Shown here piece by piece: positions 11,784 to 30,159 of a DNA stretch of 64,000 nucleotides (its first letter is position 1; each line of letters opens with the position of its first letter). The position numbers and the translations under genes were made by a program. The stretch is from Macrostomum lignano. Its lineage: Eukaryota. The notes below the pieces were generated by a model. That model saw only the letters and a program-made list of their open reading frames with translations, did not search any database and had not been told where the DNA came from. The DNA is taken from assembly GCA_002269645.1 (NCBI GenBank), contig NIVC01002971.1, forward strand, positions 1-64,000, in the 5' to 3' direction.

Positions 11784-12219
11784 TCGTGATACTCTTGTGT
11801 TATAAAATAATCAAAGACAAGCACAATCGATATGATGCCATGACAAAACTGGTTCTCAATTTACTTCATTTATAATCTTGACTATGCATTTTTGCTGGTG
11901 ATATTAAAGTAAAAAGTCCAGTTGTTTCGTTGAAAAGTCAGTTTTGTTGTACCAAAGTTCAAGCAACAGAGCTCGGCTGCAATCTATAGGGTAAGCTACC
12001 CTTAGTTTGGTAGGGTAGCTCGTAGCTGAGTTTTTAAGCTGAGTTCGGGAACTGGAGACGACACACTACAGCAATAATAGGGTGGTTACAAGGACCACTG
12101 AAGTCACTTCGTTAAACTTCTTCTTCTTCTTAAGTAGTCCTTGTGTGGTTATTGGTGAATTTCGACTTAAAGTTTAAGACGAAACAGTTACTTGATAGCT
12201 ACGTGCGTGTACAAACACT

Positions 12220-12602
<383 letters not shown>

Positions 12603-12761
12603 CTAATACTAGCTACTGAAAAACTACGTTTTGGTTGAACTACGCTCGTAGCTACTTAATTTTTTCATTAACAACAAGCATATTGCATTCTTACTTAGAT
12701 GGTCGATTAAACCAGTTCCTTCAATGTATAATATGACATAAAGTTATAGATCAGATTTTTA

Positions 12762-13209
12762 CAACAACAACAACAACAAAGTACACTGGATAGTCTCTAG
12801 TGTCACAGGGCGCGTCTCAAGGCCAGAGTGCGAACATAGGCCGCTCCGCCGGCAGAGTCCGGGGCGCCGGCGTCAGCAAGCAGGCAGTCGACGAAACGCC
12901 GAGTGCGCGCCTGTCCTCGCCGGTAGGGTGCCTGCAGCTTGAGCAGCAGCACCTCCTGCACCGGCTGTGGGCAGTACGACTCGGCGCGGATGATATGACC
13001 TGCCAGCTGGAGTCGCCGACGGCGCAGCAGGTCACTTGGACGGGCCAGGCCGGCGCGGCGATAGAGTGCCGCGTTGGTGACTTGCTTGTCGCCGATCTTG
13101 AAGGCGGCGCGCAGCAGGCCAGCGTGGGCTGCGTCGACTTGATGTTCGAGCGAGTCTGACAGCGTCCAGGTCTCGGCGTTGTAAAGCAGGACGGTTTCGA
13201 CTACCGCCG
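12762..13209 (-). mobile_element. 5'-truncated RTE-like non-LTR retrotransposon (3' end of ORF2) with (TTG)n tail and 8-bp TSD
   Basis: Post-RT motifs VLLYNAETW, VTNAALY, RRRRLQLAGHIIR and RRGQARTRRFVDCLLADAG. (ACA)n at 12762-12779 is the 3' tail on the - strand. TSD GATTTTTA at 12754-12761 and 13210-13217. Confidence 0.85.
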
Positions 13210-13323
13210 GATTTTTAGTATACTGGATGGTAACAGCCATTAAAGCAAAAGCGACACAACAGGTAAAGGGAGATCAGGTATGTGACATTGACGAAAGCTC
13301 GTCCGATTTTTCCGCAAGTCATT

Positions 13324-14490
13324 TCAGAAGCGGCCAGGTATGTTAGCCTGGTTGCTCATCGGCAGAGGATCTGTTGGCGCGGAACGACCAGTGCCGCTAC
13401 CGCGGTGCTTGCAACGCTCTAGTCGGAACAGAGCCACAAATCTCCGTCGGTAACTCGGGCTCTTCCACAGCAGAAGCAGCCAGTTACCGCTCTGGTTGAA
13501 GATGACGAGCGCCTCGCTCAGCTGCGAGATGTTTAGCAGAGCGCGAAGGAGCTGAGCATCCGCCTCTGTCCTGTGCTGACCAATGATCTGCCCTGATAGA
13601 ATGGTGAGCACACTGGGCAGAGAGCACACAGTGAGCAGGACTGACATGGCGACGCACACGATCGTGTTGGTCATCTTGTCTCTCTCGTCAGCAGCTGTCG
13701 TGAGCGACGACGAGAGCTGACGGTGTTGACGCAGGATGACTACCAGCTTGCAGGCGAGGTAGCAGTTCGTGAGCAGCACACAGAATACCGGAAGAGTCGG
13801 TGGGTTCAGGAACAGGGGCATGTACACACTCAATAGTACTTTGGCAAAGCCTTCGATGTGTGAATTAACCATGCAGACAATTAGTCGTGGGGCATTGGGC
13901 GTGAACTGAAGCTCATACCAGCTGTAGACAGCTAGGCAGACGGAGCTCAGGGCAAAGGAAGCCGCTACAGCGACGCCGCAAACTCGCCAGGCCGTGCGAT
14001 GCGAGACCGTCTGGAAGCGGAATGGCATGGCCAGACACAGAGCTCGGTCCAGCACCATCGCCAGGAAGATGCACATCGACTGTAGGCCGAGCCACTTATC
14101 AGCGAATCGGTATACAGTGCACAGAGTGGGTGAGTAGTTAGTTACAATGAAGCCAAACTGACCACCGCTGATCCAAGGCAGGCCGCGGCGAAGAAACTGG
14201 CTCAGTACGCCACCCACGAGCAGGTAGGCGCTGTCGGCGATCGCCATGGCGCCCAGGTAGACGTTGAGTCTGGTGCGCTCGGCTCCGCGACCCAGCGTGA
14301 CCCACACGGTGGCGCAGTTACCGAACAGACCGGACACCGTCACCAGAGGCAGCAGGAGGCCCGTCACAACTCCGTAGGCTGTGCTGATCGGACAGAAGAT
14401 GTGCCGGTTGGGCGCATCGGGGAGGCAGTCGACGATGGCGCTGCTCAGGCTGGCGTAGAAGCTCGTTTCTGGGGCGGAGGAGTTGGCCAT
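13324..14490 (-). CDS. Intronless rhodopsin-class (class A) orphan GPCR, peptide-receptor-like/PROF-like, copy 1 (intact, 388 aa)
   Basis: Seven hydrophobic segments; TM1 GLFGN, TM2 YLGAMAIAD, TM3 Cys and LDRALC..PF (DRY variant), TM6 CSLP, TM7 NQSGNWLLL followed by SPSYRRRF (helix 8). Confidence 0.88.
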   Translation of the reverse strand: MANSSAPETSFYASLSSAIVDCLPDAPNRHIFCPISTAYGVVTGLLLPLVTVSGLFGNCATVWVTLGRGAERTRLNVYLGAMAIADSAYLLVGGVLSQFLRRGLPWISGGQFGFIVTNYSPTLCTVYRFADKWLGLQSMCIFLAMVLDRALCLAMPFRFQTVSHRTAWRVCGVAVAASFALSSVCLAVYSWYELQFTPNAPRLIVCMVNSHIEGFAKVLLSVYMPLFLNPPTLPVFCVLLTNCYLACKLVVILRQHRQLSSSLTTAADERDKMTNTIVCVAMSVLLTVCSLPSVLTILSGQIIGQHRTEADAQLLRALLNISQLSEALVIFNQSGNWLLLLWKSPSYRRRFVALFRLERCKHRGSGTGRSAPTDPLPMSNQANIPGRF

Positions 14491-15199
14491 GTCTTGCTCA
14501 AAGCGTCTGAGATGCTGCTCTTGATTGTCGTGAGGCGGCCCGTATATTTATGCTTTTTTCTATTCGGCCGCCTCTGCAAAATTTAATCTGGGCTTAAGTC
14601 TTTTGAAAAAGCTGGGTTGACAATTTACGAGTATTGCTTTGCTGCCTTTGATGGTAATTTAATAGTTACTCAGTTGCCTTTTGTTGAGCATTAACTTTCT
14701 TGATATATCCAAAGCGTGACGACTAGTACTGCAACGACATCAACTGCTGCACAGAAACGTTTGGGTAATCAGTAACAAGATCCAAATGGAGACGCCTCCA
14801 AGTGCCCAGGTAGGCACTTCATAATTGACACTTGGATGCAGCTAAATTGATTCTAATAACTAGGAGGGTGTTTATGTATCGAATCATTGCTGCTGGTTAG
14901 CTGTTGTTATTTCGGAAGCTGTTGGGAATTTCGATTATGATTCGCAGATAGCGTCTATGCGCTTGTGTAGTCAGGAAGCAGTTTATCTAAGTTGAAGGGC
15001 CGGTTCCCGATTTCCGCTACATTTCACTCTTTGAAGTCATTCCTGTAGTAGACTGAGGAACCTTCTACCATTCGAAGGCGTCGCTGTTCTATACGATGCT
15101 TGAGATTTTGCAGCTCACCGATGAACTGATGGATTCACTCAATCAGCGAGTTAATGCAAATACGCTCGTAAGTCGATATAGGTTTTACTTATGCTCAGG

Positions 15200-18100
15200 A
15201 CCGAATGATATTTAAAACGTATATTTTCTGGCACTGTGCGGTTTTTCTGCAGTCACTCTGCTTGGGCGTCCAAAGAATTCGATGGTGAGATGTTTACTGG
15301 CATTGAGGAAGCCATCATGTCGTACTTGAAACCAAAGTTGCGTATCATACTGGCCAAGCGCAACAAGTTTTGCTCTTTTGGAGTGAGACAGCATGAGAAC
15401 GAGATACTGCCCGATTTCCTGACGAGGCTGAGGAAAGCTGCTCGCCACTGTTAATTTGATTCCCTAGATAAAAGCTCAAAGCCCAGAGATTGAAATGGTT
15501 AACCTCGCATTTGCCCACGGACGCAACACGGAGTTCTCAAAGCGATGCAGGCAGAAGAACTCAGTATCGCGGATATTGTTGTCCTGACAAGGCGAATCGA
15601 GCAAGTAGAGGACTTCGTTGCGGGTAGGCTTCGTTGCTGGCGTCCTGTCTACGGCCACTTCCTTCAAACACTGCTTGTGAGTCGCATACTCAGATCTTCC
15701 GCGGAAATTACAAGCGCCAAAATTAGCATCAGTGTTGTCGCTACTATAAAAAGAGCCATGTCGCTAGAAAATGTCCAGCCTTGGTACAGCGGTGCAGCAA
15801 ATGCAGAAAGCTCAACCACTTTGCCTCCGTATAACGCTCTACCTGTTCAAGCCTGCGCACAATATGGAAGTAACGACAATAGCACTGAGGTTTTGCACCT
15901 GTCCAACGTAGAAGTAATTCACTCGGTAGAAGCCAGCTTGGAAACATTTGCTGCTTGACACAGGCGCCTCTGTACGTCAACATCATCTCACTCGCCCAGG
16001 CGTCCAACGCTAAAGTTTTGCTACCGCCGCCTCTATGGCGGTACGCTACTGTCGTGGTCTGCGTCCCACAGACCTGAATGCTCTTCGTTCGACAAAATCT
16101 TTTGGATTTCTGGTAGAGATCTGTTGGAATCTGACCACCAGCTTTTCAGTGTAACCACAGCCAGCGACAGCCTACAGCCTACCAGTGAAGGCTCCAGTGA
16201 AGTACTTATGGTTGCCTCGTGGTTGTCTCGAGGTGGCCTGGTAGGTCTTAAGTCTCGAGCCTCTTCTTCTGGGAGCCTTCTTAGTAGCTCTTAGTAGCGT
16301 AGGTAGTGGACTAGTGGTGCCACCAGTCCGTCTGGTCTCGGCCTTCGGTGAGGTGAGCTTCTGTCGGGACGAAATAATTAAGACGAGCGAACACAGCACC
16401 GTGTGCAGATTTGCAGCTTGACAGGGCATCTTGTCAGCAGATCCTGCCGGGCTTAAGGGGTGGATGGGAAGGCTGTGTTAGCCTCTCGTAGACTTGGTGT
16501 TGGCTTCAGAAGGGTCACAGTCAGACCAATAACAAAGACTTGATAGCACACAACGGGTTCAAGACTGTTAACTGACAGGCGAAACAATCCTTGACGGAAA
16601 CAAGGGTGAGGGGTCCGTATTTATAGCCTGAGAATCCCTTTGTGCGCGAGACCTCGTGTCTTGTGACTCGTTCTATTTTTAGAACTGAATTTTTAGTATA
16701 GGGAAAGTCACTTCCCGCCCGAGGAGACAGGGGTCTCCGGGCAAAGTGCACAGGGCCGCGTGACTCAGTGTCTATTTTTAGAAATATGAGTCACGGTTTA
16801 CCTTAGAGAGCGTAAGGGCCCTGGGGCACGTGATTCCTCAGTAAACACAGACCAGTGAGTGCAGTAAACATGTTTACTGCACTTTACGACTTTAGAAAAC
16901 AGGTCACCAGCGTGACCTCAGTACTGGAGCAAAACAAGAGCAGACCACAGCAGAGAAGCATGTGGCTGCAAACAGGAGCGCAGAAAACGGGGCAGAGGAC
17001 AAGCAGCAAACGGGGAATGGACAGCAAACAGGCAGACAGAGGGGAGGCGGCAGGGTGCCTAGCGGCAGACAGCAAACCCAGGGCGATGGCGAGGGCGAGG
17101 GCGAAGGAAACTTCTGACAAGAGGGATGACGCCTAACACTAAACTAGCGGCTCACTTCACTAGCAATGATCAAGGACGTCAATGCCACGATTGAGCTCAT
17201 CGAAGATGCCACTGCGATGTTCTGTCGCGCGCGTAATGTACCTATAGCTCTTGAACCTGCTGCCAACGCCGAGTTTTTACAGGTTGCAGAAGCTGGGAGT
17301 GATCGAGCTAGTAGATAGCCCGCTGAGCAATTCGTCACCTGTGGTTCGAATAAAGAAGCCGAAACTGTAAGGATGTGTGCTGACTACAGTGTGCATGTGA
17401 ATGCTAAAATACGTTCTGAGGATTAACCAATCCTCATTGGTTAATTAGGATGAAGATGAGCGTAGAATGCCTACTAGAAAGGATCAAGAACGCGAGGAGG
17501 TTAGCCGGGGTTGACCTGCGATCCGCCTACCGGCAGATGGTGTTGAACAAAAGCTGCCTAGGATCTATCAGTAATTTTAATGTCAAAGGGTCTGTTGTTT
17601 GCATAAATAACTGCAGATAAGGATGAAAATGCCTAATTCCTTTTGGAAAGCATTCTATCTGACTTACAATGGGTTTTTATTTATCAACAAGATGTCCTGG
17701 TCTTTACCGAATATTCAGAGTCGCTGCTAAAAAGACTCTCTCATTAAGCCAAACTTGTGGAGAATCATGTCGCCATCAAAGACAGCAAGTGCGTAGAAGA
17801 GACGGACATAGTCTCTTTCCTAGGCTTCAAAATCCCATCTGACGGCATCCAGCCAGACGATAGACTTGTGGACAAGATCTGCAACATCGCCACACCCAGG
17901 AATGAGAAACAAATAGAGAACTTGATCTGACTCGTGAAATGTTTTGGTCATCCGAATTTCTAAAGAAAGGCAAAACTTTTTAACGACTTGCGGCATTCCA
18001 ATGTACCTTTCTCGTGATTCACAAGCTGAAAATCTGCTTTTCGTGCTCTGAAGAAGAAAAAATCGCGTCACAGTCGGTCGTCCAGACAAACACTTTTGAG

Positions 18101-18650
18101 AAAGAGGTCACCCTCACGACGGACGCATCCAAAGGCGCCCTTTTCCGGCGGATTCACTTAAGAGTTCACTCGGTCATCTTCATCACCAGAAGTCTCTTCA
18201 AGGCCAAAGTAAATTATTGGAAGAAAGGCGGAGTTCCGCTTACTAAGGGCGATTCTAAAGGAGGCGCTTAGGGGCGAACATCCACGCGTATCTCCCGATG
18301 GGCATCTGCAATAATGTAATATGACCACATAGGTACTTACATCCTAGGAAAAGACACCCCCACGTGGACGCGTTAATTGTCGCGGTTGCGTTTCACATAC
18401 TCGTCCGTTGATGCAGAAAAGTGCGCAGTGCAATCATCAACTGTGTGGCGTTTGAAGCACCAGTTATTCCGTTGGAGATTGAGCTGAGCGCCGACCTACA
18501 GTACATGTATTCATTTCAAACTTTAGTCGTCTCGCCAGTTCAGGCGATTGGAGACGATTCTCACAGGTGGAGAAGCCATTATGGCATGTTTTGGAGATGC
18601 TCACGGTAGAGAACGGTCTACTATTCAAAAGCCGCTAGGTTTTGATCCAA
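15200..18650 (+). mobile_element. Decayed Ty3/Gypsy internal region (gag-pol with many stops and frameshifts)
   Basis: Remnants in order: gag (RQHENE..DFLTRLRKAARHC), protease LDTGAS (~15958) and GRDLL (~16110), RT (SPVVRIKK, RMCADY, VDLRSAYRQM, SFLGFKI..DGIQPD), RNase H (VTLTTDASKGA). Confidence 0.8.
16151..17137 (-). mobile_element. LTR-like insertion (TG...CA ends) interrupting the decayed Gypsy between protease and RT
   Basis: Gypsy coding remnant stops at ...TTTTCAG (16150) and resumes near 17140. The insert begins TGTAAC, ends CTAACA, and carries a - strand TATAAATA. No matching TSD found. Confidence 0.5.
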
Positions 18651-19452
18651 CAGTAGTGAGGCCTTTAGCGTGGCTCACAGCACTAATTAGGGCTATTTCG
18701 CTACTTTCGCTATTTCGCTAGGGCGAATTATCGGGTCTGTGGGGAGATCATTGCGGTGTGAAGGGCACATGTTTAAATCCGAGTGAGTCCAAAATTATTT
18801 GAGTTACACACTGCCAGTCTTACTCGGGGAGGCAATAAACGAAAAAAATAATACTCGGTACTATAAAATGATGAAAGACCAACACAATCAAAATATGATG
18901 CCGGGGCAAAAATTGTGCTAAAAATTACTGGTAATTTCGGGTATGCATTCTAGCTGGTGCGAAAGCAGGTGATATTGAAAAATAAAGTCCAGATGTCGCG
19001 TTCAATTTACTTACAATGCTGTTTTGTTGTACCGAGGTTCAAACAGTTACTGAAGAGTTCGGCTGTAATCTAAAGAGTAGGTGTAGTACACGGGTTTTTA
19101 AAACTGAGGGCGGGAACTGGAGACGACATACTACAGCAATAAGACAGTGGTTATTGGTGAGCTTAATTTTAAAGTTTAGGACGAAACATTTGGGTGATAG
19201 CTACGTGAACAAACACTCATACTACTGAAAAACTACCGTCAAGCTTGAACCAACTATTGCTGTTCATTACAACAAGCATAATGCATTCTTTCTTTTTGAT
19301 GGCCGATTAAACTAGTTCCTTCAGTTTCTGACATAAAATAGAATTCTTGATCGAATAGCCACAACTAATACAGCAAAAGCGACACAACAAGCAAAATGAG
19401 TTCAGGTCAGTGACATTTGACAACGGCTCATCCGATTTTTCCGCAAGTCATT

Positions 19453-20618
19453 TCAGAAGCGGCCAGGTATGTTAGCCTGGTTGCTCATCGGCAGAGGATC
19501 TGTTGGCGCGGAACGACCAGTGCCGCTACCGCGGTGCTTGCAACGCTCCAGTCGGAACAGAGCCACAAATCTCCGTCGGTAACTCGGGCTCTTCCACAGC
19601 AGAAGCAGCCAGTTACCGCTCTGGTTGAAGATGACGAGCGCCTCGCTCAGCTGCGAGATGTTTAGCAGAGCGCGAAGGAGCTGAGCATCCGCCTCTGTCC
19701 TGTGCTGACCAATGATCTGCCCTGATAGAATGGTGAGCACACTGGGCAGAGAGCACACAGTGAGCAGGACTGACATGGCGACGCACACGATCGTGTTGGT
19801 CATCTTGTCTCTCTCGTCAGCAGCTGTCGTGAGCGACGACGAGAGCTGACGGTGTTGACGCAGGATGACTACCAGCTTGCAGGCGAGGTAGCAGTTCGTG
19901 AGCAGCACACAGAATACCGGAAGAGTCGGTGGGTTCAGGAACAGGGGCATGTACACACTCAATAGTACTTTGGCAAAGCCTTCGATGTGTGAATTAACCA
20001 TGCAGACAATTAGTCGTGGGGCATTGGGCGTGAACTGAAGCTCATACCAGCTGTAGACAGCTAGGCAGACGGAGCTCAGGGCAAAGGAAGCCACTACAGC
20101 GACGCCGCAAACTCGCCAGGCCGTGCGATGCGAGACCGTCTGGAAGCGGAATGGCATGGCCAGACACAGAGCTCGGTCCAGCACCATCGCCAGGAAGATG
20201 CACATCGACTGTAGGCCGAGCCACTTATCAGCGAATCGGTATACAGTGCACAGAGTGGGTGAGTAGTTAGTTACAATGAAGCCAAACTGACCACCGCTGA
20301 TCCAAGGCAGGCCGCGGCGAAGAAACTGGCTCAGTACGCCACCCACGAGCAGGTAGGCGCTGTCGGCGATCGCCATGGCGCCCAGGTAGACGTTGAGTCT
20401 GGTGCGCTCGGCTCCGCGACCCAGCGTGACCCACACGGTGGCGCAGTTACCGAACAGACCGGAACCGTCACCAGAGGCAGCAGGAGGCCCGTCACAACTC
20501 CGTAGGCTGTGCTGATCGGACAGAAGATGTGCCGGTTGGGCGCATCGGGGAGGCAGTCGACGATGGCGCTGCTCAGGCTGGCGTAGAAGCTCGTTTCTGG
20601 GGCGGAGGAGTTGGCCAT
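19453..20618 (-). pseudogene. GPCR copy 2, near-identical to copy 1 but with a 1-bp frameshift in TM1 (or an assembly indel)
   Basis: CCGGAACCGTC at ~20460 versus CCGGACACCGTC in copy 1 splits the ORF into 20331-20618 and 19453-20436. Confidence 0.8.
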
Positions 20619-21023
20619 GTCTTGCTCAAAGCGTCTGAGATGCTGCTCTTGATTGTCGTGAGGCGGCCCGTATATTTATGCTTTTTTCCATTCGGCCGCC
20701 TCTGCAAAATTTAATCTGGGCTTAAGTCTTTTGAAAAAGCTGGGTTGACAATTTACGAGTATTGCTTTGCTGCCTTTGATGGTAATTTAATATTTCAGCT
20801 TGTTTTTTTGGTGAGCATCAATTTTTCTGATTAATACAGCCATCAACATGAATTGCACTGCGTTCATCTTCACCCAGCTAGATTTTTTCTGATGTGGTCA
20901 GTAAGCAAGAAAGCTGTTGATTGAATTGAAAACCCATCTTATTATCTAGATGTAACTGCTTTATCCCGAGATTAGCGTTGCCCTGGCGAAAGAGAAAGAT
21001 TGATTTCAGTATCCCTGCCCCGC

Positions 21024-21204
21024 TGTAAGAGGCGTGAATGTTTTCGCTGTTGTGTGGTTGTTATTGGGTCGGAGTTATTCATCTGCAAATAATCGCGATG
21101 TACATTGATTGATGTACATTGCAAATATATAAATCGTTGCGCGTGGCTTTAGCCACTTCGTGTGTTTTTGGTCTCGCTTAACTCTCGCCTTCTCTCAGTT
21201 TACA
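21024..21204 (+). repeat. 5' LTR
   Basis: TGTAAGAGG...AGTTTACA, identical to 25802-25982. Confidence 0.97.
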
Positions 21205-21205
21205 T

Positions 21206-21217
21206 TGGTGGCAGCGG
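21206..21217 (+). promoter_or_regulatory. Primer-binding site complementary to the tRNA-Leu 3' end
   Basis: TGGTGGCAGCGG is the reverse complement of CCGCUGCCA-CCA, the 3' end of eukaryotic tRNA-Leu(AAG/TAG). Confidence 0.8.
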
Positions 21218-21223
21218 CCTCAG

Positions 21224-22084
21224 TTGCAAACCGGCTCACTTATGGCGCACGCAAATGCACTTTTACCGCCAAAGTTTTCTGGCTCAGACGATACTGATAT
21301 CAACATGTGGCTGCAGATGTTTGAGGACTTTGCAGCAGATTCTGAGTGGAACGACACCAAGATGGCATCCAAGATCAAGCTGCTTCTATCAGGTGAAGCC
21401 CTCGTGTTCGTCTGGGACCTGCCAGCGGCCAAACAGAGCAGCTACAAGATCTTAAAGGACGAACTCGTCAAGTTCTACAGAGGCAAGGATAACACTTTTC
21501 GCGCTATGTCTGAGTTCGAGAGCCGGAAGCGACGCCAAGGAGAGTCGCTGAGGGAGCTGTGCTACGCACTCAAGCTTCTGTATCGAAAGGCACGCCCGGA
21601 GCACGCTCAAACGGTGAGAGATTGCGAAGTGCGACACCGACTGCTAGCTCTGCTGCCGACAGAGATCCGTGAGGCTCTGTTGAAAGCTTCGGATTATGAC
21701 AGCAGCAGTCCTGAACAGCTGGCAGACCGCGCCACAGCGCTGGAGAGCATCGGCAGCAAAGGAGCCCCGGCAAGCGTCGCAGTGACATCGGTGAGCAGCC
21801 AAGTGACTGACCGGCTGGAGCAAATGCAAGAGCAGTTGGCGGATCTGGCTGCGACGGTCGCCACCATTGGCAGCCGCGGAGGACAGCGCGGTGGGAGAAG
21901 GAATGCAGCTCGTGGAAGAGGCAGCACCCGTGGAAAATGCTTCAACTGCGCTCAGCCCGGTCATTTCGCTGCTCAGTGTCCAGGCAAGCAAGTCGCTCCA
22001 GCTGTGCCGTCTGTGTGCAGCCGCTGCTCAGGCAGAGGACACCGGGCCGAGGTCTGCCCGACCCCGGCTTCGGGAAACTTCTGA
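21224..22084 (+). CDS. gag: Gag with two CCHC zinc knuckles
   Basis: PKFSG..WL..FE motif, capsid-like region, CFNCAQPGHFAAQC and CSRCSGRGHRAEVC. Confidence 0.93.
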   Translation: MQTGSLMAHANALLPPKFSGSDDTDINMWLQMFEDFAADSEWNDTKMASKIKLLLSGEALVFVWDLPAAKQSSYKILKDELVKFYRGKDNTFRAMSEFESRKRRQGESLRELCYALKLLYRKARPEHAQTVRDCEVRHRLLALLPTEIREALLKASDYDSSSPEQLADRATALESIGSKGAPASVAVTSVSSQVTDRLEQMQEQLADLAATVATIGSRGGQRGGRRNAARGRGSTRGKCFNCAQPGHFAAQCPGKQVAPAVPSVCSRCSGRGHRAEVCPTPASGNF

Positions 22085-22115
22085 GGACTGGTGAGCGCGG
22101 GCCATCACCAGCCCT
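22072..22115 (+). promoter_or_regulatory. -1 ribosomal frameshift signal (G GGA AAC plus downstream hairpin)
   Basis: Slippery heptamer in gag frame at 22072-22078, two codons before the gag stop; 5-nt spacer; stem AGG-A-CTGGTGA / TCACCAG-C-CCT at 22084-22115. Confidence 0.85.
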
Positions 22116-25100
22116 GCCTAGCAAGGCCCAAACCGTCTCAATATTTCTGCCCGGCAGCATTGCTGGCCGGCCCTGCAGGTGGCTGTTCGACACTGGCGCA
22201 CAGGTAACTTTAGTTTCAGCTGCGCTGCTTCGAGTTCTAGGAGTCGATGCTCAGCTTCATCCTCCTATCAGCACTCCGGTCGGAATCGATGGTCGACGCT
22301 TGGAGTCTCCGGCGAGTGCAACGCTAGCGATACAGCTAGAGGGACTGCCATCCGTGGAGCACCAGGTAATGGTGGTTGCCGGGATTCAGCCGGAATGCGT
22401 GCTCGGTATGGACGCCATCGGGAAAATGTGCTCAAGTTTTAGCGTCAATCTCCCGGCGTCTTCCGTCCAGCTGGGGTCAACCAGGATCTCGATCTTGCCG
22501 GACAGGAGCTCCTCGCAGGCCTGCCGAGTGGTGCCCACCGCCGTGATTGCCAGAGTTGCCAGCACCGTGTCCATTCCAGCCCGCAGCCGCGTCATCATCC
22601 CAGTCAAAGTGCCATCGTCTGTCGAGCAGGGTCTATTCGAGCCCAGCTCAGATTTTATTGACAAGACTGGCCTGCTGCCAAACAGGGCTCTGGTGGTCTC
22701 CAGCGTAGACGGAAATCTCCCAGTGGGCGTCTGCAACGTGAGTGCCGACCCGGTGGTGCTCTACCAGAACCAGGCAATCGGCAACTTCGACGCTGCAGAA
22801 GTAAACGGAGCAGACGGTGAACCTGGTGAAGAGGAAGCTGGCTTTAACATCAACCCGGAGCTGAGCGAGTCGCAGCGCGAGCGCATCGAATCCTTGCTGT
22901 GCCAGGCAGAGCAGGCATTCGCCAGGCACGAGTTTGACCTGGGAACAACACACCTGCTGCAACACGAGATTAATCTGGAACCCGGCAGTCGCCCCATCAA
23001 GCATAGGCAACGGACCGTTCCCCTGAATTACCGGCAGCAAGTGGACGAGAAAATTAGCGAGATGCGGCGTCACGGGATTATCGAGCCGTCCTGCAGTCCA
23101 TGGGCGAGTAATCTGCTTGTGGTGCGAAAGAAAAACAACGAGATTCGAATCTGCACCGACTGGAGAGCCCTCAACTCGTGCACCGTGAAGGACGCCTACC
23201 CGCTGCCTCCGCTGTCTGCTGCGCTGGACGCGCTCACTGGAGGCAGTTGGTTCAGCACTCTTGACCTCCGCCAAGGGTTCCTGCAGGTTGAGCTGCGAGA
23301 GCAAGACCGGGAGAAGACCGCTTTCTACACCACGCAGGGCCTGATGCAGTACAGGAAACTCGGGTTCGGCCTCTGCAACGCCCCGGCAACCTTTCAGCGC
23401 CTGATGGACCTAACGATGGCCGGCCTGAACTGGACAGAGGTGCTCACGTACATGGACGATCTGATTCTGTTTAGTCAGACCTTCGAGAAGCATGCGGAAA
23501 CACTGGAACAGGTCCTGGGAAGACTGCAGTCTGCCGGCCTCAAATTGAACAAACGCAAGAGCTACTTCTGCTTCCAGGAGGTTGAGTACCTAGGACACAA
23601 AATCTCGGCAGAAGGCATTCGACCAACTCAGGACAAGGTCAGCGCTATCCAGTCCATCCCGATACCCGAATGCGCTGAGGATGTTCGCCGGCTTGTCGGC
23701 ATGCTGGGCTTCTACCGGCGTTTCGTTCCGCACTTCGCCAGCATCGCTAATCCGCTTCATCAGGCGACTCAGAAGAGTCGACAGTTTCAATGGACAACTC
23801 AGTGCGATGACGCTCTGCGGAAGCTGAAGTCAGCTCTGTCGACACCACCCGTACTGAAGCTGCCTGACTTCTCCAAGGGATTCCGGTTGTGCTGTGACAG
23901 CAGCGGAGTGGCCATCGCCGGCGTCCTGAGCCAGCTCCACGAAGATGCAGAGTGTCCGGTAGCCTACGCGTCGAGAGTCCTGAACAAAGCGGAGCGCAAT
24001 TATTCGACTACCCACAGAGAGCTTCTTGCGGTGGTCTGGGCGATGAAGCATTTCCGGAACTACTTGGCGTCCGCTGGCGAAATTCTCGTCTTCACCGACC
24101 ACAAGCCGTTGCAAGGGCTGCTCAACACCAAGGAGCCAGAAGGCCGGCTAGCCAGATGGATTACGTTTCTGCAGGAGATCAACTTCAAGCTGCTCTTCAG
24201 ACCTGGTCGCGAAAACGTGGTTGCGGACGCACTGAGCCGAGCAGCGGCGACCCGGCTGCACCCTGCCTGGTCGGACAACGACATCCGTGTAGCGCAGGCT
24301 GACGACCCAGTGCTAGCGGCGGCTCGACAAGTGCTCCTCGGACAAAGGCCAAGACGTGGCAAGGCTGCAGATGACGCAGAACACCTGGTGAGGACAGAGA
24401 AGCTGGACCTTGGTGAAGATGGCGTCCTCAAGAAGAGTGGCCAACCCGTCATCCCGCGGCAGCTTCGCCAGGACCTGCTGCAGCTGCTGCACGACGATCC
24501 TGCAAGCGGGCACCTCGGAACCGAAAGGACGCTGGCCAGAGTCGTCAGCAGAGCTTGGTGGCCCGGCCTAAAGGACGACGTCCAGCACTGGGTGAGCAGC
24601 TGCGAAGTGTGTCAGCGTCGCAAGGTACCGCATCAGCACCAGAGGGCACCGCTGCAGATCAACACCGTGCCATCAGCTCCTTGGGAGATGGTGCAGGTGG
24701 ACATCAAAGGGCCCCTCCCAGAGACTGAAGCCGGCCTCAGGTACATCATCTGCTTCACGGACGTGTTTTCCAAGTGGGTTGAGGCGACCGCGGTGTCCAA
24801 CATTGAGGCCCGGACGGTTTCGGATGCGCTGCTAAGGAGTGTCGTTCTTCGCCACGGAGCGCCCGAAGTCATCCACTCCGATCAGGGTCGTCAGTTTGAA
24901 AGTGACATCTTCCAAGAGCTGTGCCGCCTGCTGGATATTCGCAAGACAAGAACGACACCCTTCCATCCCAGCGGCAACCCTGCAGTCGAGCGGTTCAACC
25001 GAACATTAGGCGACATGCTGGCGGCGTACTGCATGGAACAGCAGAACAAATGGGCGGACTTCCTGCCGTACGTCATCTGGGCCTACAACTCTTCAGCGCA

Positions 25101-25695
25101 CTGCACCACCAAGAGGTCGCCCTACGCAGTGCTTCACGGATGTGACCCCAGGATCCCGGCAGAGCTCAGTTTACCTGCAGGCGGCGAAAGGAGGCTCGTC
25201 ACGGACACGCTGGCAGACGCTCGCACCGGCTTGCAGCTCGTGCGGCAGCGCCTGCAGTCGACACAGCGGTCACGGAAGCAGCAGTACGACAAGCGCCAGC
25301 ACTTCACGCCGATCCAAGTCGGGCAGCTGGTGATGCTCAGCAACCCGGCGGTGTTGAAGGGCCAGTCCAAGGCTCTCCGTCGGCGGTGGCTGGGACCGTA
25401 CCGCGTGCTCGAGAGGCTGAGCCCCGTCACCTACCGGATCTCAAAACCCGCCGGCCGGAGACGAAGCACGGTGGTGCATCACGACCGGCTCAAGCTGTTC
25501 GTGCGCAGGCGGCCGCAGCCCGCTTCCTGGCAGTCCGCCCCGACTCCGCCCGCTGCAGAGGCCGGCCGACCGCCCAGCCCGGCTGTCGATCCGCGGCTGA
25601 CCTGGACGGACTTGCTGGATGAGCCGACCGCAGTCGGCCCTCGGCGTTCTGCAAGGACTCGAAGACCGCCTGATTTTTATGCTGCGCAAAACTAG
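22072..25695 (+). CDS. pol: Pol (protease-RT-RNase H-integrase), in the -1 frame relative to gag
   Basis: LFDTGAQ protease, YMDD RT, RNase H (CCDSS, TDHKPL, ADALSR), HHCC zinc finger, integrase core (VDIKGP, SDQG, ERFNRT), GPY motif. Confidence 0.95.
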   Translation, partial: GKLLRTGERGPSPALPSKAQTVSIFLPGSIAGRPCRWLFDTGAQVTLVSAALLRVLGVDAQLHPPISTPVGIDGRRLESPASATLAIQLEGLPSVEHQVMVVAGIQPECVLGMDAIGKMCSSFSVNLPASSVQLGSTRISILPDRSSSQACRVVPTAVIARVASTVSIPARSRVIIPVKVPSSVEQGLFEPSSDFIDKTGLLPNRALVVSSVDGNLPVGVCNVSADPVVLYQNQAIGNFDAAEVNGADGEPGEEEAGFNINPELSESQRERIESLLCQAEQAFARHEFDLGTTHLLQHEINLEPGSRPIKHRQRTVPLNYRQQVDEKISEMRRHGIIEPSCSPWASNLLVVRKKNNEIRICTDWRALNSCTVKDAYPLPPLSAALDALTGGSWFSTLDLRQGFLQVELREQDREKTAFYTTQGLMQYRKLGFGLCNAPATFQRLMDLTMAGLNWTEVLTYMDDLILFSQTFEKHAETLEQVLGRLQSAGLKLNKRKSYFCFQEVEYLGHKISAEGIRPTQDKVSAIQSIPIPECAEDVRRLVGMLGFYRRFVPHFASIANPLHQATQKSRQFQWTTQCDDALRKLKSALSTPPVLKLPDFSKGFRLCCDSSGVAIAGVLSQLHEDAECPVAYASRVLNKAERNYSTTHRELLAVVWAMKHFRNYLASAGEILVFTDHKPLQGLLNTKEPEGRLARWITFLQEINFKLLFRPGRENVVADALSRAAATRLHPAWSDNDIRVAQADDPVLAAARQVLLGQRPRRGKAADDAEHLVRTEKLDLGEDGVLKKSGQPVIPRQLRQDLLQLLHDDPASGHLGTERTLARVVSRAWWPGLKDDVQHWVSSCEVCQRRKVPHQHQRAPLQINTVPSAPWEMVQVDIKGPLPETEAGLRYIICFTDVFSKWVEATAVSNIEARTVSDALLRSVVLRHGAPEVIHSDQGRQFESDIFQELCRLLDIRKTRTTPFHPSGNPAVERFNRTLGDMLAAYCMEQQNKWADFLPYVIWAYNSSAHCTTKRSPYAVLHGCDPRIPAELSLPAGGERRLVTDTLADARTGLQLVRQRLQSTQRSRKQQYDKRQHFTPIQVGQLVMLSNPAVLKGQSKALRRRWLGPYRVLERLSPVTYRISKPAGRRRSTVVHHDRLKLFVRRRPQPASWQSAPTPPAAEAGRPPSPAVDPRLTWTDLLDEPTAVGPRRSARTRRPPDFYAAQN

Positions 25696-25788
25696 TTTAC
25701 TGGTTCATTTTTGCTATTCGTGCATTTTTAATTCTCATGGTTTTACTGCCTCTTTTGTCTTTTCGCAGTTTTTTATTATCCTCAATTT

Positions 25789-25801
25789 AGGGAAGGAGTG
25801 A
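25789..25801 (+). promoter_or_regulatory. Polypurine tract
   Basis: AGGGAAGGAGTGA immediately before the 3' LTR. Confidence 0.85.
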
Positions 25802-25982
25802 TGTAAGAGGCGTGAATGTTTTCGCTGTTGTGTGGTTGTTATTGGGTCGGAGTTATTCATCTGCAAATAATCGCGATGTACATTGATTGATGTACATTGC
25901 AAATATATAAATCGTTGCGCGTGGCTTTAGCCACTTCGTGTGTTTTTGGTCTCGCTTAACTCTCGCCTTCTCTCAGTTTACA
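25802..25982 (+). repeat. 3' LTR
   Basis: Identical to the 5' LTR. Confidence 0.97.
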
Positions 25983-26363
25983 CTGCTCTTGATTGTCGTG
26001 AGGCGGCCCGTATATTTATGCTTTTTTCCATTCGGCCGCCTCTGCAAAATTTAATCTGGGCTTAAGTCTTTTGAAAAAGCTGGGTTGACAATTTACGAGT
26101 ATTGCTTTGCTGCCTTTGATGGTAATTTAATATTTCAGCTTGTTTTTTTGGTGAGCATCAATTTTTCTGATTAATACAGTCATCAACATGAATTGCACTG
26201 CGTTCATCTTCACCCAGCTAGATTTTTTCTGATGTGGTCAGTAAGCAAGAAAGCTGTTGATTGAATTGAAAACCCATCTTATTATCTAGATGTAACTGCT
26301 TTATCCCGAGATTAGCGTTGCCCTGGCGAAAGAGAAAGATTGATTTCAGTATCCCTGCCCCGC
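25983..26363. repeat. 381-bp direct duplicate of 20643-21023 (GPCR upstream region)
   Basis: CTGCTCTTGATT...CCTGCCCCGC on both sides of the Gypsy; one mismatch seen (ACAGCCATC vs ACAGTCATC). Confidence 0.95.
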
Positions 26364-26415
26364 TGATAACGACAATTGTAATTGCATGTGACGCCCTAGA
26401 CTAGACTGGTTTCTA

Positions 26416-26760
26416 CGAGCGTAGTAAATCACAAGGTCTTTGTGTCAGAGTCGAGTGTAGTAAATCACAAGGTCTTTGTGTCAGAGTCGAGCGTAGTAAA
26501 TCACAAGGTCTTTGTGTCAGAGTCGAGTGTAGTAAATCACAAGGTCTTTGTGTCAGAGTCGAGCGTAGTAAATCACAAGGTCTTTGTGTCAGAGTCGAGC
26601 GTAGTAAATCACAAGGTCTTTGTGTCAGAGTCGAGCGTAGTAAATCACAAGGTCTTTGTGTCAGAGTCGAGCGTAGTAAATCACAAGGTCTTTGTGTCAG
26701 AGTCGAGCGTAGTAAATCACAAGGTCTTTGTCTCAGAGTCAAGGGTAGTAAATCACATCT
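26416..26760. repeat. 36-bp minisatellite (~9.5 copies)
   Basis: Unit GAGTCGAGCGTAGTAAATCACAAGGTCTTTGTGTCA, with no spacers. Confidence 0.95.
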
Positions 26761-27478
26761 GTGTCAGTGTCTACGTGTGTCACATGGACCGTTTTCATTG
26801 CGTCATAGTCTGCTAAGCGCACTTCGTCAGGACACGTTCATTCATCGGACTCCGCCATCAGCCCTCCCTAGCTTCACTCTCTAGGAGAACATCAAGTCTT
26901 CATTATGAATCGCAAGAGCAACTCGATGTCTTGCTTTGAAAGATTTTTTTCTAAAACAAGGAAAGTACTGTAGCGAGAATTTTGCTATTTAACAACAGGC
27001 TTATAAATCATTAGAAAAGGCAAGTTGTGCTACACAGATACGCCCTCATGGCGGGTCCTTTGCAAATCTGCATGCGAGTATAGTAGTGTAGTATAGCTTC
27101 CACTTGAGGCAGGATGCTGGCCTGTTGCTGCTTGTGGAAAGCTTAGGTTAGGCAGATGATTTAGGTAAAACTAATGAGGCTTTACAATTTATCAGCCACA
27201 CGCAGGAGTGCACAGTGTGTCACGTTGCCTAGCTATAGATAGAGTGCATAGTGGCGCAGACTGCGTTGCCTGCACGCACCCAACCTGAACTGTAAAGCAT
27301 TTTATGTAGTTTTAAACCCTTCCCATGTGGGTTTTTCTTTGTGGGAAGGGGTATTTCGTAGCACAAGAAACTATTGTACCGCTACACCTTTATTTGTTCG
27401 AGCATATATAGATGTAGTATACATGACGAACATTGGGTCACAAACATTACTTAGTTCTCGCAATGCCTTGCATTATAA

Positions 27479-28200
27479 TACGAGGGGTGTCCCAGAAGTA
27501 TGTAGTGTCACTTTTGCTTGCTTCCATGAGTACACCTTTTCACGTTTAATTTTGAACAAAGTCCAGTTCTAAAAAAACTAGCGGAAATTCAATTCAGACA
27601 ATTCAGACTGGGGACAATTTTGTCTATGGCTAAAACTTGCTTCGGTTGCATAATGTTTTGAACTGGGGTTTGTTGCCCCAGTCGGAATTGTCTAAATTGA
27701 ATTTCCGCTAGTTTTTTTAGAACTGGACTTTGTTCAAAATTGAACGTGAAAAGGTGTATTAATGTGTGTTTAAAAATCATATGCCTTAAAAGTTAGCGGC
27801 TTATTTTAGCTTTCATGCCACGAAAATCGAAAATCCAATTTTTATAAGTGCTTCCTGCTATAAGCAGCATGCATTTGTTCGCATACCCTTGGCCATAGAA
27901 ATACACACCGCATTGTGCTTCTATGCTCACTCAGAAGAAAGCCACAAGTAGAGCTGATCAAGCACAGAGTTGCAAGACAGCAGCTGCAAGATTTGTTCCA
28001 CTCATCATGGGCCCTAACTTTTGGATGAGTTGACAACACACTGCCGGCCGCCTCGCATTGTTCGATCCACCTGTAAACTGTCGTCGACTGATGGCATCGG
28101 GAGTCGGGACCGTGAATGCGGGTCAGGTTTTCGTGAATGTCAGGGCATTTCTGACCAAGACTCCAAAGTGTAAAAATTGCGTGACTCCGCCCTTCTGTAG
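27479..28200 (-). mobile_element. Tc1/mariner-derived remnant with an internal 83-bp inverted repeat
   Basis: TA+CGAGGGGTGTCCCAGAAGT mariner-type TIR at 27479. The - strand at ~28040-28190 encodes an N-terminal HTH-like remnant (AIFTLWSLGQKCPDIHENL..IHG...TTVYRWI). IR arms at 27531-27613 and 27676-27758. Confidence 0.55.
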
Positions 28201-28731
28201 AGTGAAAGTTCTGTATTATGTATGACGCTTCGTAGTATGACGCAAGTCATACATAATTAATCAATAGCTAGTTTATAGTAAACTTTGCGAGCAACTTCCA
28301 TCAAAGAGGGCTAAATGAAAAACATGCAAATCAATGCAAATCATGCAAATCAGTTAAAATTAAAAAAACTCGCTATAATTGAAAAAGTATGCTCCAATGC
28401 AACAAGAAAAGTGATTTTAGAGTCTTGTATTCAAAATACATTTTAAGGGAAGTGGACTTAAAATTATGTGCATGCATTTAAGCTAGAGCTGGCCGCTACA
28501 TTAGGATCAGAAGTTGATTATAACAATTAATAGCAATTAGTAAAGAAAATATTGGTTATCAAAGAATACCTACGTATGATTTTTTACTCCTAGTGGGAAT
28601 AAATCAGTTGTTGAATAAAATTTGTTGCAATGGCAAATATATGTACTTTCACAGCGCTAAATTTCCTACAACTCAGTAAGGCTAGTTGAAGTGCAATTAG
28701 GATTCAATAGGCTAAAGCTGAGTGCTCCTTG

Positions 28732-29456
28732 CCCGATAAAAACGGTACCCAGGCCAAGAAGCGTTCCGGAGTCACCTGCGTCGCCCAGAGTCGTTTCAGA
28801 CGCGTTACAGATGATAGATCAAATAGGAAAGAAGTGATTCTAAAAAGACTCTTAGATGTCCCAGTACAAGTCGCCAAAAAGTCGCAGAAGAGGCGCTTTA
28901 GCGTCACTTAGTGCATCACTTTTGAGTAGATGAGCACGCATTTTCTTTTCGCCCAGAAATGACGATCAAGCAGTCTGTTAGACCCGTAGTAACGACTCTG
29001 TAAGTTGTCCTTGAGTGACGCACTAAACGGTTCTACAGTGACGCTAAAGCGCTTCTTCTGCGACTTTTTAGCGACTGCAGAACGCCACTGAAACGCCGGA
29101 AATGTGACTCTAATTCATCAAGCGATGCAAATGCGCTTTAAAAACCACTCAGCGACTCTAGCTATAGCTAGTAGTGCGACTACTCTGGAACGCCGGCCTC
29201 AAATACGACTCTATGGCCCCAGAATCGTTATACTGGCGCCCCGGAGTCGCTAGAGTCGCGCCAAAATCACTTGCGTCGCCCCCTCTCCCTCCAGAATCGT
29301 TCAGAATCGCAGACAATAAAATGTATCAAAGTGATTTTGGGGCGATTCTAACGACTTTTTGGCGACTTGTACCGTGACATCTCGGATCGTTTTAGAGTCG
29401 TTTACCGAGTCACTTCTTTCCTATTTGATCTATGTCTGGGTACCGTTTTCACCGGG
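28732..29456. mobile_element. Non-autonomous TIR element (CCCAG...CTGGG core 28748-29440, TA-flanked) with AGTCG/CGACT subterminal repeats
   Basis: Long imperfect inverted repeats (GATAGATCAAATAGGAAAGAAGTGA, GTACAAGTCGCCAAAAAGTCG and their complements); no ORF. Confidence 0.75.
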
Positions 29457-30159
29457 TTTTACAGCATTTTACCTTCCATTTCATTTAAACTCAACTTAAT
29501 TTACTTTGGACAATCGGAAGTTCAACTTCGTTACTTCTAGCTAGGTCTATATACATGTAAGTCTACATTCATTATGTATCGTCAAACTGACGTTGACGAT
29601 TTTGGATGTACGCTGACGAAAGTGAATCAGATTTTATAAAAGTTGCGTCAACAGATTGTCGAAATGAATTGGAGCTCGACAAAAAATAAATGGAGTTTTG
29701 TCAGTGCCAACCACATATAGGCTCTCTTCACAATAAAAATTTGTGCTTGCTGTCGATATTGAAAAGGAGTTTGTCTAAAATAAATTTATAGATGTACATG
29801 TACATCTAAAAAAATTGAAGTGTCGAATTTGCATGAACTTCCGATATTGTCTAAAGTGAATTAGAATTTGAATGAAATTGAAGGTAAAATGGTGCAACAT
29901 GAAATACACTTTAGGGAATTTTAATTTTGCACGCAGGAAAAATGTTAGGCTTTGCAATTGAAAAATTTCTCGGACTTTTGGTTTTCCTGTTTTTTACTTG
30001 ATCCGTTCTGGTGCGTTCCCATAATTTTTTTCAGAGCGCCAAAATAAGTGCCTTTAAATTACTAATTTTGTCAAGTTACTTAAAAATAGTGTATAGTATT
30101 CCAGTAATACCTGAACAATTGACAATCGCCACGCACTTTAAAGTTCCCAATGTAGTGTA

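What the first reader, a model, noticed from the sequence alone, without database searches (positions are those of the whole stretch)
20643..26363. Intact Gypsy flanked by a 381-bp 'giant TSD' that points a host GPCR promoter antisense into the 3' LTR
Seen: the element has identical LTRs but no 4-6-bp TSD (left flank ends CCCGC, right flank begins CTGCT). Instead, 20643-21023 is repeated directly at 25983-26363 with one mismatch. This segment begins 25 nt upstream of the GPCR ATG and contains a - strand TATA-like box (ATAAATATA at 20671-20679; copy at 26011-26019). In the second copy the predicted start (~25990) lies a few bases outside the 3' LTR, so transcription would run antisense through the whole element. 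Established: LTR integrases normally make 4-6-bp TSDs; large duplications arise from uncoordinated one-ended integration or from unequal recombination between two insertions at nearby sites. Inference: the event both duplicated a host promoter and may have created a cis-antisense (piRNA/siRNA-triggering) transcript for an otherwise active element.
Basis: partly seen in the sequence, partly recalled or inferred. Interest (0 to 1): 0.8.

Follow-up and report, generated by a model that had tools for sequence, protein, structure and literature searches.

The report
Flatworm Gypsy element with 381-bp flanking duplication
An intact, young Ty3/Gypsy retrotransposon of the flatworm Macrostomum lignano is flanked by a real 381-bp duplication of a receptor gene's upstream region instead of its family's usual 4-bp one; this is a rare integration outcome already known from human endogenous retroviruses, and the proposed antisense-promoter effect is untested.

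Summary
A 4,959-bp Ty3/Gypsy element (21024-25982) has identical 181-bp TG..CA LTRs and intact gag and pol. It lies between two direct copies of a 381-bp host segment, 20643-21023 and 25983-26363, which differ at one base.

The window is the start of Macrostomum lignano contig NIVC01002971.1 (Mlig_3_7). A second contig (NIVC01000866.1) carries the same segment-element-segment structure, including the same C/T difference between the copies. A chance misassembly is therefore unlikely.

Five other independent insertions of this family all have canonical 4-bp duplications (GCTA, GTTG, GCTG, GTAC, GTCT). This locus is the exception, one of six.

Best explanation (about 0.6): one aberrant, non-concerted integration joined the two LTR ends to target positions 381 bp apart. 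The same outcome is documented for HERV-K(HML-2) loci with 111-450-bp duplications. The main rival is two nearby insertions followed by unequal recombination; chance co-location of two insertions is about 1e-5.

The duplicated segment carries a TATA-like box conserved in three receptor paralogs. In the right-hand copy it points into the 3' LTR. Antisense transcription and piRNA triggering remain pure inference.

The adjacent receptor gene's frameshift in this window is a 1-nt run-length difference that is absent from the second contig.

Verdict: a new example of a known kind, of modest interest.

The parts
13324..14490 (-). GPCR-B: intact single-exon 388-aa rhodopsin-family 7TM gene, tandem paralog of GPCR-A. 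Its upstream 14491-14704 matches 20619-20831 and is uninterrupted at 14514|14515, the equivalent of the left edge of the duplication.
   Evidence: 7tm_1 E=9.8e-13
19453..20618 (-). GPCR-A: 7TM receptor gene next to the element. In this window a 1-nt deletion in an A-run at 20463/4 breaks the frame. In the second contig it is in frame and encodes a protein identical to GPCR-B.
20643..21023 (.). Left copy of the 381-bp duplicated host segment (-25 to -405 relative to the GPCR-A ATG).
20671..20679 (-). TATA-like box ATAAATATA, about 55 nt upstream of the GPCR-A ATG. It is conserved in paralogs B and C although C's upstream region is otherwise diverged.
21024..21204 (+). 5' LTR, 181 bp, TG...CA, with TATATAAA at 21126-21133.
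21206..21223 (+). Putative primer binding site TGGTGGCAGCGGCCTCAG, 1 nt after the LTR.
   Evidence: read from the sequence, the tRNA was not identified
21242..22084 (+). gag ORF (280 aa) with a CCHC zinc knuckle.
21937..25695 (+). pol ORF (1252 aa), in the -1 frame and overlapping gag, with domain order PR-RT-RNaseH-integrase (H2C2, rve, p58_C/SH3).
25789..25798 (+). Polypurine tract AGGGAAGGAG, 3 nt before the 3' LTR.
25802..25982 (+). 3' LTR, identical to the 5' LTR.
25983..26363 (.). Right copy of the 381-bp host segment. It abuts the last base of the 3' LTR and continues into the unique flank TGATAACG...
26011..26019 (-). Copy of the TATA-like box. A start about 30 nt downstream would fall near 25989, 7 nt outside the LTR, reading antisense into the element.
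   Evidence: the start site is an inference
26416..26757 (.). 36-bp tandem array (9.5 copies here, roughly 22 in the second contig) just right of the duplicated segment.

Best explanation
A single, aberrant (non-concerted) integration of one cDNA of a young Macrostomum lignano Ty3/Gypsy family. The two LTR ends were joined to the target at positions 381 bp apart rather than 4 bp apart: the U5 end at 20642|20643 and the U3 end at 21023|26364 of the pre-insertion sequence. This could have happened on one duplex or across sister chromatids. Fill-in, replication or repair of the intermediate then duplicated the intervening 381 bp. Both junctions lie exactly at the LTR termini. The U3 junction has a 2-nt TG microhomology, so that end could alternatively have been sealed by host end-joining after a one-ended integrase reaction. 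One by-product is a second copy of the receptor gene's core-promoter region (the TATA-like box) at the element's 3' end, facing inwards. Another is that the gene keeps its native 405 bp of upstream sequence. What is shown: the structure, its presence in two contigs, and the family's normal 4-bp TSD. What is inferred: the single-event mechanism and any promoter activity of the duplicated copy.
For: The host segment abuts the exact TG and CA termini of identical LTRs on both sides. So both junctions are retroelement-end junctions, not random breakpoints. The left edge is continuous host sequence in paralog B (14514|14515). Both copies share a base that differs from paralog B (G in 'GAATGG' vs A in 'GAATAG'), so the right copy derives from the left copy's locus and not from the paralog. 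The same structure, with the same C/T difference at position 198 of the segment, is in a second contig, NIVC01000866.1. That contig differs by 4 substitutions and 1 indel over 7.5 kb and has a longer 36-bp array. Five other independent loci of the family have clean 4-bp TSDs, so the family's integrase is normal and this copy is the exception. The ages agree with one event: LTRs 0/181 differences, segment copies 1/381. There is precedent: HERV-K(HML-2) loci flanked by 111, 250 and 450-bp duplications, with the pre-integration allele sequenced for the 250-bp case (PMC5488345), and retroviral aberrant integrants discussed in PMC4422153. The rival needs two insertions within 381 bp. With 6 known independent loci in a 764-Mb assembly (size from PMC5730564), chance co-location in the same orientation is about 15 pairs x 5e-7, or roughly 1e-5 (my calculation).
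Against: No pre-integration allele, and no single-insertion allele, could be examined. The sequence alone cannot separate one wide-stagger event from two insertions plus unequal crossing-over, because both predict exactly this structure. The ancestral continuity of the right edge (26363|26364) is not verified, since paralog homology ends at 20831. The right junction starts with C, whereas all five canonical TSDs start with G. The two contigs differ by only about 0.05%, far below the 1.4-2.4% between the species' subgenomes (PMC10733133). They may therefore be haplovariants or a redundantly assembled single locus rather than independent chromosomes.
Confidence: 0.6

Rival explanations
1. Two independent insertions of the same family, in the same orientation and 377-381 bp apart, one at each edge of the segment, on sister chromatids or homologs. 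Unequal homologous recombination within the elements then produced one recombinant element flanked by the duplicated interval (a 'pseudo-TSD').
For: It predicts exactly the observed structure, with mismatched 4-bp half-sites (CCGC on the left, CTGC on the right). The family is very young and probably active: LTRs are identical and copies differ by 0.2-0.9%. The shared C/T difference between the two segment copies could be a pre-existing polymorphism between the two parental chromosomes. Pseudo-TSD models are discussed for HERV-K (PMC5488345).
Against: It requires two hits within 381 bp by a family with only 6 independent loci found, about 1e-5 by chance. There is no sign of hot-spot targeting. 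The other insertions sit in a 22-bp satellite, in low-complexity sequence, in an intron-like position and 1.8-3.9 kb from genes, and no tRNA genes lie near any copy. No parental or reciprocal allele was seen among the 10 copies retrieved.
Confidence: 0.15
2. Assembly artefact: a haplotype switch or mis-join inside the 5-kb repeat created the duplication in silico.
For: Mlig_3_7 is a Canu assembly of early PacBio reads from a repeat-rich hidden polyploid, with much redundancy and many chimeric scaffolds (PMC5730564, PMC10733133). The element is about 99% identical to copies elsewhere.
Against: Both junction types (segment end|LTR start and LTR end|segment start) must exist in reads to be assembled at all. 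Two separately built contigs show the identical structure and the same internal C/T difference, while differing elsewhere. A haplotype switch between x-only and y-only alleles should also give the complementary deletion or single-copy contigs, and none was seen.
Confidence: 0.05
3. A pre-existing 377-bp tandem duplication of the promoter region, into whose junction the element inserted canonically with a 4-bp TSD that later acquired one mutation (CCGC vs CTGC).
For: The 4 nt on either side of the element match at 3 of 4 positions.
Against: A 3/4 match is expected by chance in about 5% of cases. The model needs the insertion to hit exactly the duplication junction (about 1 in 760 positions). 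It also needs a substitution inside 8 bp, while 362 bp of LTR carry none and 762 bp of segment carry one. Paralog B shows no such tandem duplication.
Confidence: 0.03
4. Functional reading: the right-hand copy is an active promoter that makes an antisense transcript through the element and triggers siRNA/piRNA silencing.
For: The TATA-like box ATAAA(T)ATAC is conserved at the same distance from the ATG in paralogs A, B and C, even though C's upstream region is otherwise diverged. The copy retains it, with a predicted start near 25989, 7 nt outside the LTR. In M. lignano, proximal regions of up to 2 kb upstream were enough to reproduce tissue-specific expression for the genes tested (PMC5730564).
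Against: No expression evidence for this receptor is available here, and the protein has no match at E<=1e-20 in the protein collection. The copy lacks the native start region, leader and ATG. No transcript or small-RNA data could be consulted.
Confidence: 0.15

Closest known systems
HERV-K(HML-2) insertions with long target-site duplications (7p21.2 solo LTR, 250 bp; 6p25.2 provirus, 111 bp; 21q21.1 provirus, putative 450 bp) - PMC5488345, PMC4422153
   Same: An integrase-bearing LTR retroelement whose family normally makes short TSDs. Individual copies are flanked by a direct duplication of hundreds of bp of contiguous host DNA abutting the LTR ends. The same two explanations are debated: inefficient or aberrant integration versus a recombinational pseudo-TSD.
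   Different: Those are vertebrate betaretrovirus-like ERVs and are mostly solo LTRs or truncated proviruses. This one is a full-length, apparently competent Ty3/Gypsy element in a flatworm, its LTRs are identical, and the duplicated DNA is a gene's core-promoter region. No pre-integration allele is available here.
Experimental aberrant retroviral integrations (RSV/RCAS U5 mutants; HIV-1 under suboptimal raltegravir), cited through PMC4422153 (Oh et al. 2006; Varadarajan et al. 2013; neither paper is held)
   Same: One end is inserted by integrase and the other is inserted aberrantly or by host enzymes, giving large duplications or deletions of host DNA. The 2-nt TG microhomology at the U3 junction here would fit a host-joined end.
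   Different: As I recall those papers, one viral end is often imperfect. Here both ends are complete and precise.
Inter-element unequal recombination between LTR retrotransposons (elements lacking matching TSDs, well known in plants)
   Same: An intact element whose two immediate flanks do not form a short TSD.
   Different: Recombinants between distant elements have unrelated flanks. Here the flanks are a 381-bp direct duplication, which requires the two parental sites to be 381 bp apart.
Very long TSDs of non-LTR elements (R9 in rotifers, 126 bp; Dualen in Chlamydomonas, median about 900 bp) - PMC9977147
   Same: A long duplication of target DNA set by the distance between the two strand cleavages.
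   Different: Those come from endonuclease/TPRT mechanisms and are a regular property of the family. Here the element uses a DDE integrase and the long duplication is a one-off (1 of 6 loci).

Membership tests
Ty3/Gypsy (Metaviridae) LTR retrotransposon | Pol domain order protease - RT - RNase H - integrase | tested here: met
   Pfam hits along the 1252-aa ORF: Asp protease 72-162, RVT_1 396-556, RT_RNaseH 619-747, Integrase_H2C2 839-897, rve 914-1011, Integrase_p58_C/SH3 1129-1186.
Ty3/Gypsy (Metaviridae) LTR retrotransposon | Direct LTRs with TG...CA ends, a PBS after the 5' LTR, a PPT before the 3' LTR, and gag with a CCHC knuckle | tested here: met
   Identical 181-bp LTRs. TGG-starting PBS at 21206 and PPT at 25789-25798. 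zf-CCHC E=3.3e-8. The priming tRNA was not identified.
Ty3/Gypsy (Metaviridae) LTR retrotransposon | Short (4-6 bp) target-site duplication | tested here: not met
   Not met at this copy (CCGC vs CTGC; a 381-bp repeat instead). Met at 5 of 5 other independent loci of the same family, all with 4-bp TSDs. The family is therefore a normal member and this copy is aberrant.
Bona fide long TSD from a single integration (as HERV-K 7p21.2) | The duplicated host DNA abuts the exact LTR termini on both sides, in direct orientation | tested here: met
Bona fide long TSD from a single integration (as HERV-K 7p21.2) | A pre-integration allele exists with one copy of the segment, continuous with both outer flanks | not testable with these tools
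   Only the left edge could be checked indirectly, through paralog B. No other M. lignano sequence of this locus could be retrieved except the second contig, which also carries the insertion.
Bona fide long TSD from a single integration (as HERV-K 7p21.2) | The structure is real in the genome, not an assembly product | tested here: inconclusive
   It is reproduced in a second contig with a shared internal difference. Raw reads could not be inspected, and the two contigs are only about 0.05% diverged.
Pseudo-TSD by recombination between two nearby insertions | Parental single-insertion alleles, or a target hot spot that makes double hits likely | tested here: not met
   No such allele is among the 10 retrieved copies. 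The other insertion sites show no common genomic context. The sampling is limited to one assembly.
Cis-antisense / piRNA-triggering promoter | Minus-strand initiation at the duplicated promoter and element-antisense small RNAs | not testable with these tools
   Only the conserved TATA-like box and its orientation are shown.

The most novel reading that the evidence does not exclude
The integration event itself copied a working TATA promoter to the element's 3' end. This active Ty3/Gypsy copy would then be transcribed antisense from the day it inserted, making it a self-made silencing trigger for the whole young family. The 381-bp repeats would also give the host a clean homologous-recombination route to excise the element precisely.
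Probability: 0.07. Interest if true: 0.65.

Novelty: new member of a known kind. Interest (0 to 1): 0.3.

Why it matters
It extends the phenomenon of LTR retroelements flanked by target duplications of hundreds of bp. Until now this was documented mainly for HERV-K and for experimentally perturbed retroviruses. Here the element is a full-length, apparently active invertebrate Ty3/Gypsy whose siblings integrate normally.

M. lignano is transgenic-tractable and has RAMPAGE, RNA-seq and inbred sublines. The locus could therefore be used to ask two things: how such events arise (one event or two), and whether a duplicated core promoter facing into a transposon has any silencing consequence.

In practice, it is also a caution for LTR-RT annotation pipelines that demand a 4-6-bp TSD. 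They would reject this intact copy.

Tried and rejected
1. I looked for an empty-site or single-insertion allele and found none.
- The exact look-up of GPCR-B found nothing.
- A homology search with GPCR-B returned no protein at E<=1e-20, so the locus could not be reached through the receptor.
- All 12 contig look-ups went on the element family. They returned one same-locus contig, which also carries the duplication.

2. I tried to verify the right edge through paralogs. A sensitive BLAST of a reconstructed empty allele against paralog B's upstream region and against the whole window found homology only up to 20831/14704.

3. I tested Ty3-like tRNA-gene targeting as a source of double hits. 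No tRNA genes lie in the window or near any copy.

4. I asked whether the segment hides an RNA gene. There are no Rfam hits at E<=0.1 in 12000-30000.

5. I asked whether the right copy was donated by paralog B. This is rejected, because both copies share the A-specific base.

6. I considered a larger composite LTR (segment plus LTR). This is rejected, because the order is segment-LTR...LTR-segment, not segment-LTR...segment-LTR.

7. A whole-window repeat scan for other LTR pairs was swamped by the (CTGATA)n satellite and was uninformative.

8. Supplementary tables of the M. lignano LTR-RT survey, which might name the family or clade, are not held. Oh 2006 and Varadarajan 2013 are not held either.
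Full report
**1. What is in the sequence**

A direct repeat of 381 bp (20643-21023 and 25983-26363) brackets a 4,959-bp LTR element at 21024-25982. The two repeat copies differ at one position (20840 C / 26180 T).

The LTRs are 181 bp (21024-21204 and 25802-25982). They are identical and begin with TG and end with CA. The 184-bp figure from the repeat finder over-extends by 3 nt.

The host base before the 5' LTR is ...CCCCGC and the host sequence after the 3' LTR is CTGCTC.... So there is no 4-6-bp target-site duplication. The right edge of the repeat is ambiguous by 2 nt, because the LTR starts TG and the unique flank after the second copy starts TGATAA.

The element has all the expected parts:
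- a TGG-starting primer binding site 1 nt after the LTR;
- a polypurine tract 3 nt before the 3' LTR;
- a 280-aa gag with a CCHC knuckle;
- an overlapping -1-frame 1252-aa pol with protease, RT, RNase H and integrase domains in Ty3/Gypsy order.

**2. Where it comes from**

The pol protein is on record on one contig, NIVC01002971.1 of assembly GCA_002269645.1. Window and contig coordinates are the same. Its closest relatives are named Macrostomum lignano proteins.

NIVC00000000 is the Mlig_3_7 assembly of the DV1 line. It was built with Canu on PacBio reads and polished with Pilon. It is 764 Mb, about 21% LTR retrotransposons, and has extensive redundancy (PMC5730564). The species carries three subgenomes that differ by 1.4-2.4% (PMC10733133).

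**3. The host context**

The segment lies upstream of a minus-strand, single-exon rhodopsin-family 7TM gene, GPCR-A (19453-20618). It begins 25 nt upstream of that gene's ATG.

GPCR-A has two paralogs in the window:
- GPCR-B (13324-14490) is an intact tandem paralog of 388 aa (7tm_1 E=1e-12). Its homology to A runs from 19361 to 20831, which is 189 nt into the duplicated segment.
- GPCR-C (40361-40948) is a partial third paralog.

In this window GPCR-A has a 1-nt deletion in an A-run at 20463/4, which splits the ORF. In the second contig (see section 4) the run is one base longer, and the gene encodes a 388-aa protein identical to GPCR-B. The 'frameshift' is therefore a run-length error or an allele-specific lesion, not a property of the locus.

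Paralog B is uninterrupted across the position equivalent to the left edge of the duplication (14514|14515). So the left copy sits in its original context. Both copies carry an A-specific base that differs from B. So the right copy was copied from this locus and not from the paralog.

The receptor has no match at E<=1e-20 among 5.8 billion proteins and is not an annotated gene on record.

**4. Is the duplication real?**

Locus L003 is a second contig, NIVC01000866.1 (470 kb). It contains the same left flank, the same segment-element-segment arrangement and the same right flank.

Over 7.5 kb it differs from the window by four substitutions and the one indel. It also carries about 22 copies of the neighbouring 36-bp repeat instead of 9.5. 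The C/T difference between the left and right segment copies is present in both contigs.

Two separately built consensus sequences therefore agree on the structure and on its one internal difference. That argues against a chance mis-join.

An in-silico haplotype switch between an 'insertion at the left edge' allele and an 'insertion at the right edge' allele would need both junction types in the reads. It should also yield complementary contigs, and none is seen.

There is a caveat. The two contigs differ by only about 0.05%, far below the subgenome divergence. They may be haplovariants or a redundantly assembled locus, and I could not look at reads.

**5. What the family normally does**

The 90%-identity protein cluster has 12 members. 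I retrieved nine further genomic copies.

By their flanks they represent five further independent loci, several of them again present in two or three contigs. All five have clean 4-bp duplications: GCTA, GTTG, GCTG, GTAC and GTCT.

Copies at different loci differ by 10-43 substitutions in about 5 kb. LTR pairs differ by 0-1. So this is a very young family with a normally working integrase. The window's locus is the single exception among six.

The other insertion sites share no obvious context: a 22-bp satellite, low-complexity DNA, an intron-like position, and 1.8-3.9 kb from genes. No tRNA genes lie nearby.

**6. Mechanism**

Both junctions are exact LTR termini, so both are retroelement-end joins. 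Two histories give precisely this product.

(A) One cDNA whose two ends were joined 381 bp apart. This would be non-concerted integration, within one duplex or across sister chromatids. Alternatively, one end was sealed by host end-joining, for which the TG microhomology at the U3 junction is suggestive but only 1-in-16 evidence. Repair or replication would then duplicate the interval.

(B) Two ordinary insertions at the two edges, followed by unequal crossing-over within the elements.

The sequence cannot separate them. I favour (A) on prior odds:
- Two hits within 381 bp by a family with six known loci in 764 Mb is about 1e-5 unless there is a hot spot, and I saw no sign of one.

A pre-existing tandem duplication hit exactly at its junction (3/4 match, CCGC vs CTGC) is too coincidental.

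The ages fit one recent event: 0/181 LTR differences and 1/381 segment differences.

**7. The promoter reading**

A TATA-like motif (ATAAATATA on the minus strand at 20671-20679) lies about 55 nt upstream of the ATG. It is conserved in paralogs A, B and C, although C's upstream region is otherwise diverged. That is reasonable evidence for a core promoter element.

The right copy keeps the motif (26011-26019). A start about 30 nt downstream would fall near 25989, 7 nt outside the 3' LTR, and would read antisense into the element.

Everything beyond that is inference that I could not test: initiation at the orphan copy, an antisense transcript, and siRNA/piRNA consequences.

Two further consequences follow from the anatomy:
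- The gene keeps 405 bp of its native upstream sequence in spite of the insertion.
- The 381-bp repeats allow precise loss of the element by homologous recombination. This point was also raised for HERV-K long TSDs.

**8. Comparison and novelty**

It works like the long-TSD HERV-K insertions and like experimentally aberrant retroviral integrations. It is an ordinary member of Ty3/Gypsy in every tested feature except the TSD of this one copy.

The M. lignano LTR-RT survey that I could read (PMC12801592) does not mention TSDs. I found no report of such a case for an invertebrate Ty3/Gypsy element, but my literature search was limited to the held library.

I class it as a new member of a known kind. 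It is real and unusual within its family, but mechanistically precedented, and its most interesting implication is untested.

**9. Verdict**

- Observation: confirmed.
- Interpretation: partly supported.
- Best explanation: a single aberrant integration, confidence about 0.6.
- Interest: 0.3.

Noticed in passing
window 13324-14490(-), 19453-20618(-), 40361-40948(-): This is a cluster of rhodopsin-family 7TM receptor paralogs. A and B encode identical 388-aa proteins (taking the second contig's version of A), while their flanks diverge sharply at 19361 and 20831. That suggests a very recent tandem duplication or gene conversion. The protein has no match at E<=1e-20 in 5.8 billion proteins and is not annotated.
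   Followed up: partly
window 20463-20464: There is a 1-nt shorter A-run than in contig NIVC01000866.1, and it breaks the GPCR-A frame only in this contig. It is probably a residual long-read run-length error, or possibly an allele-specific lesion.
   Followed up: yes
L002, L004/L005/L010, L006/L008, L007, L009 (element ends): All five canonical 4-bp TSDs of the family start with G and are preceded by A or T (GCTA, GTTG, GCTG, GTAC, GTCT). By chance this is about 0.001. The preference is asymmetric, because the last TSD base is not C. The aberrant copy's right junction starts with C.
   Followed up: partly
L003; L004/L005/L010; L006/L008: Each of three loci of this family occurs in two or three different contigs of Mlig_3_7, with element copies only 0-4 substitutions apart. 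This illustrates the assembly's redundancy and haplovariants.
   Followed up: partly
window 8085-11783: There is a 3.7-kb (CTGATA)n satellite array. It produces three spurious stop-free 'ORFs' of over 1,200 aa on both strands.
   Followed up: no
window 37468-38635: A 49-bp tandem array (18 copies) is followed directly by degenerate TTAGGG-like interstitial telomeric repeats (38358-38635).
   Followed up: no
window 27525-27764; L009 2690-2878: An inverted repeat with 89-nt arms (94% complementary, 62-nt spacer) has a related copy near another locus of the family. It is probably a dispersed MITE-like repeat.
   Followed up: no
window 26416-26757: The 36-bp tandem array next to the right segment copy has 9.5 copies here and about 22 in the second contig. 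This is either a length polymorphism or assembly collapse.
   Followed up: partly
window 12803-13240(-): A 145-aa ORF abuts the 3' end of GPCR-B and has no Pfam hit. From memory its sequence resembles the C-terminal tail of non-LTR retrotransposon ORF2 proteins. This was not tested.
   Followed up: no
window 45326-48179(+): These ORFs encode ankyrin repeats (Ank E=5e-49) and are interspersed with short coding-like tandem repeats (9-, 15- and 29-bp units at 44971-46131).
   Followed up: no
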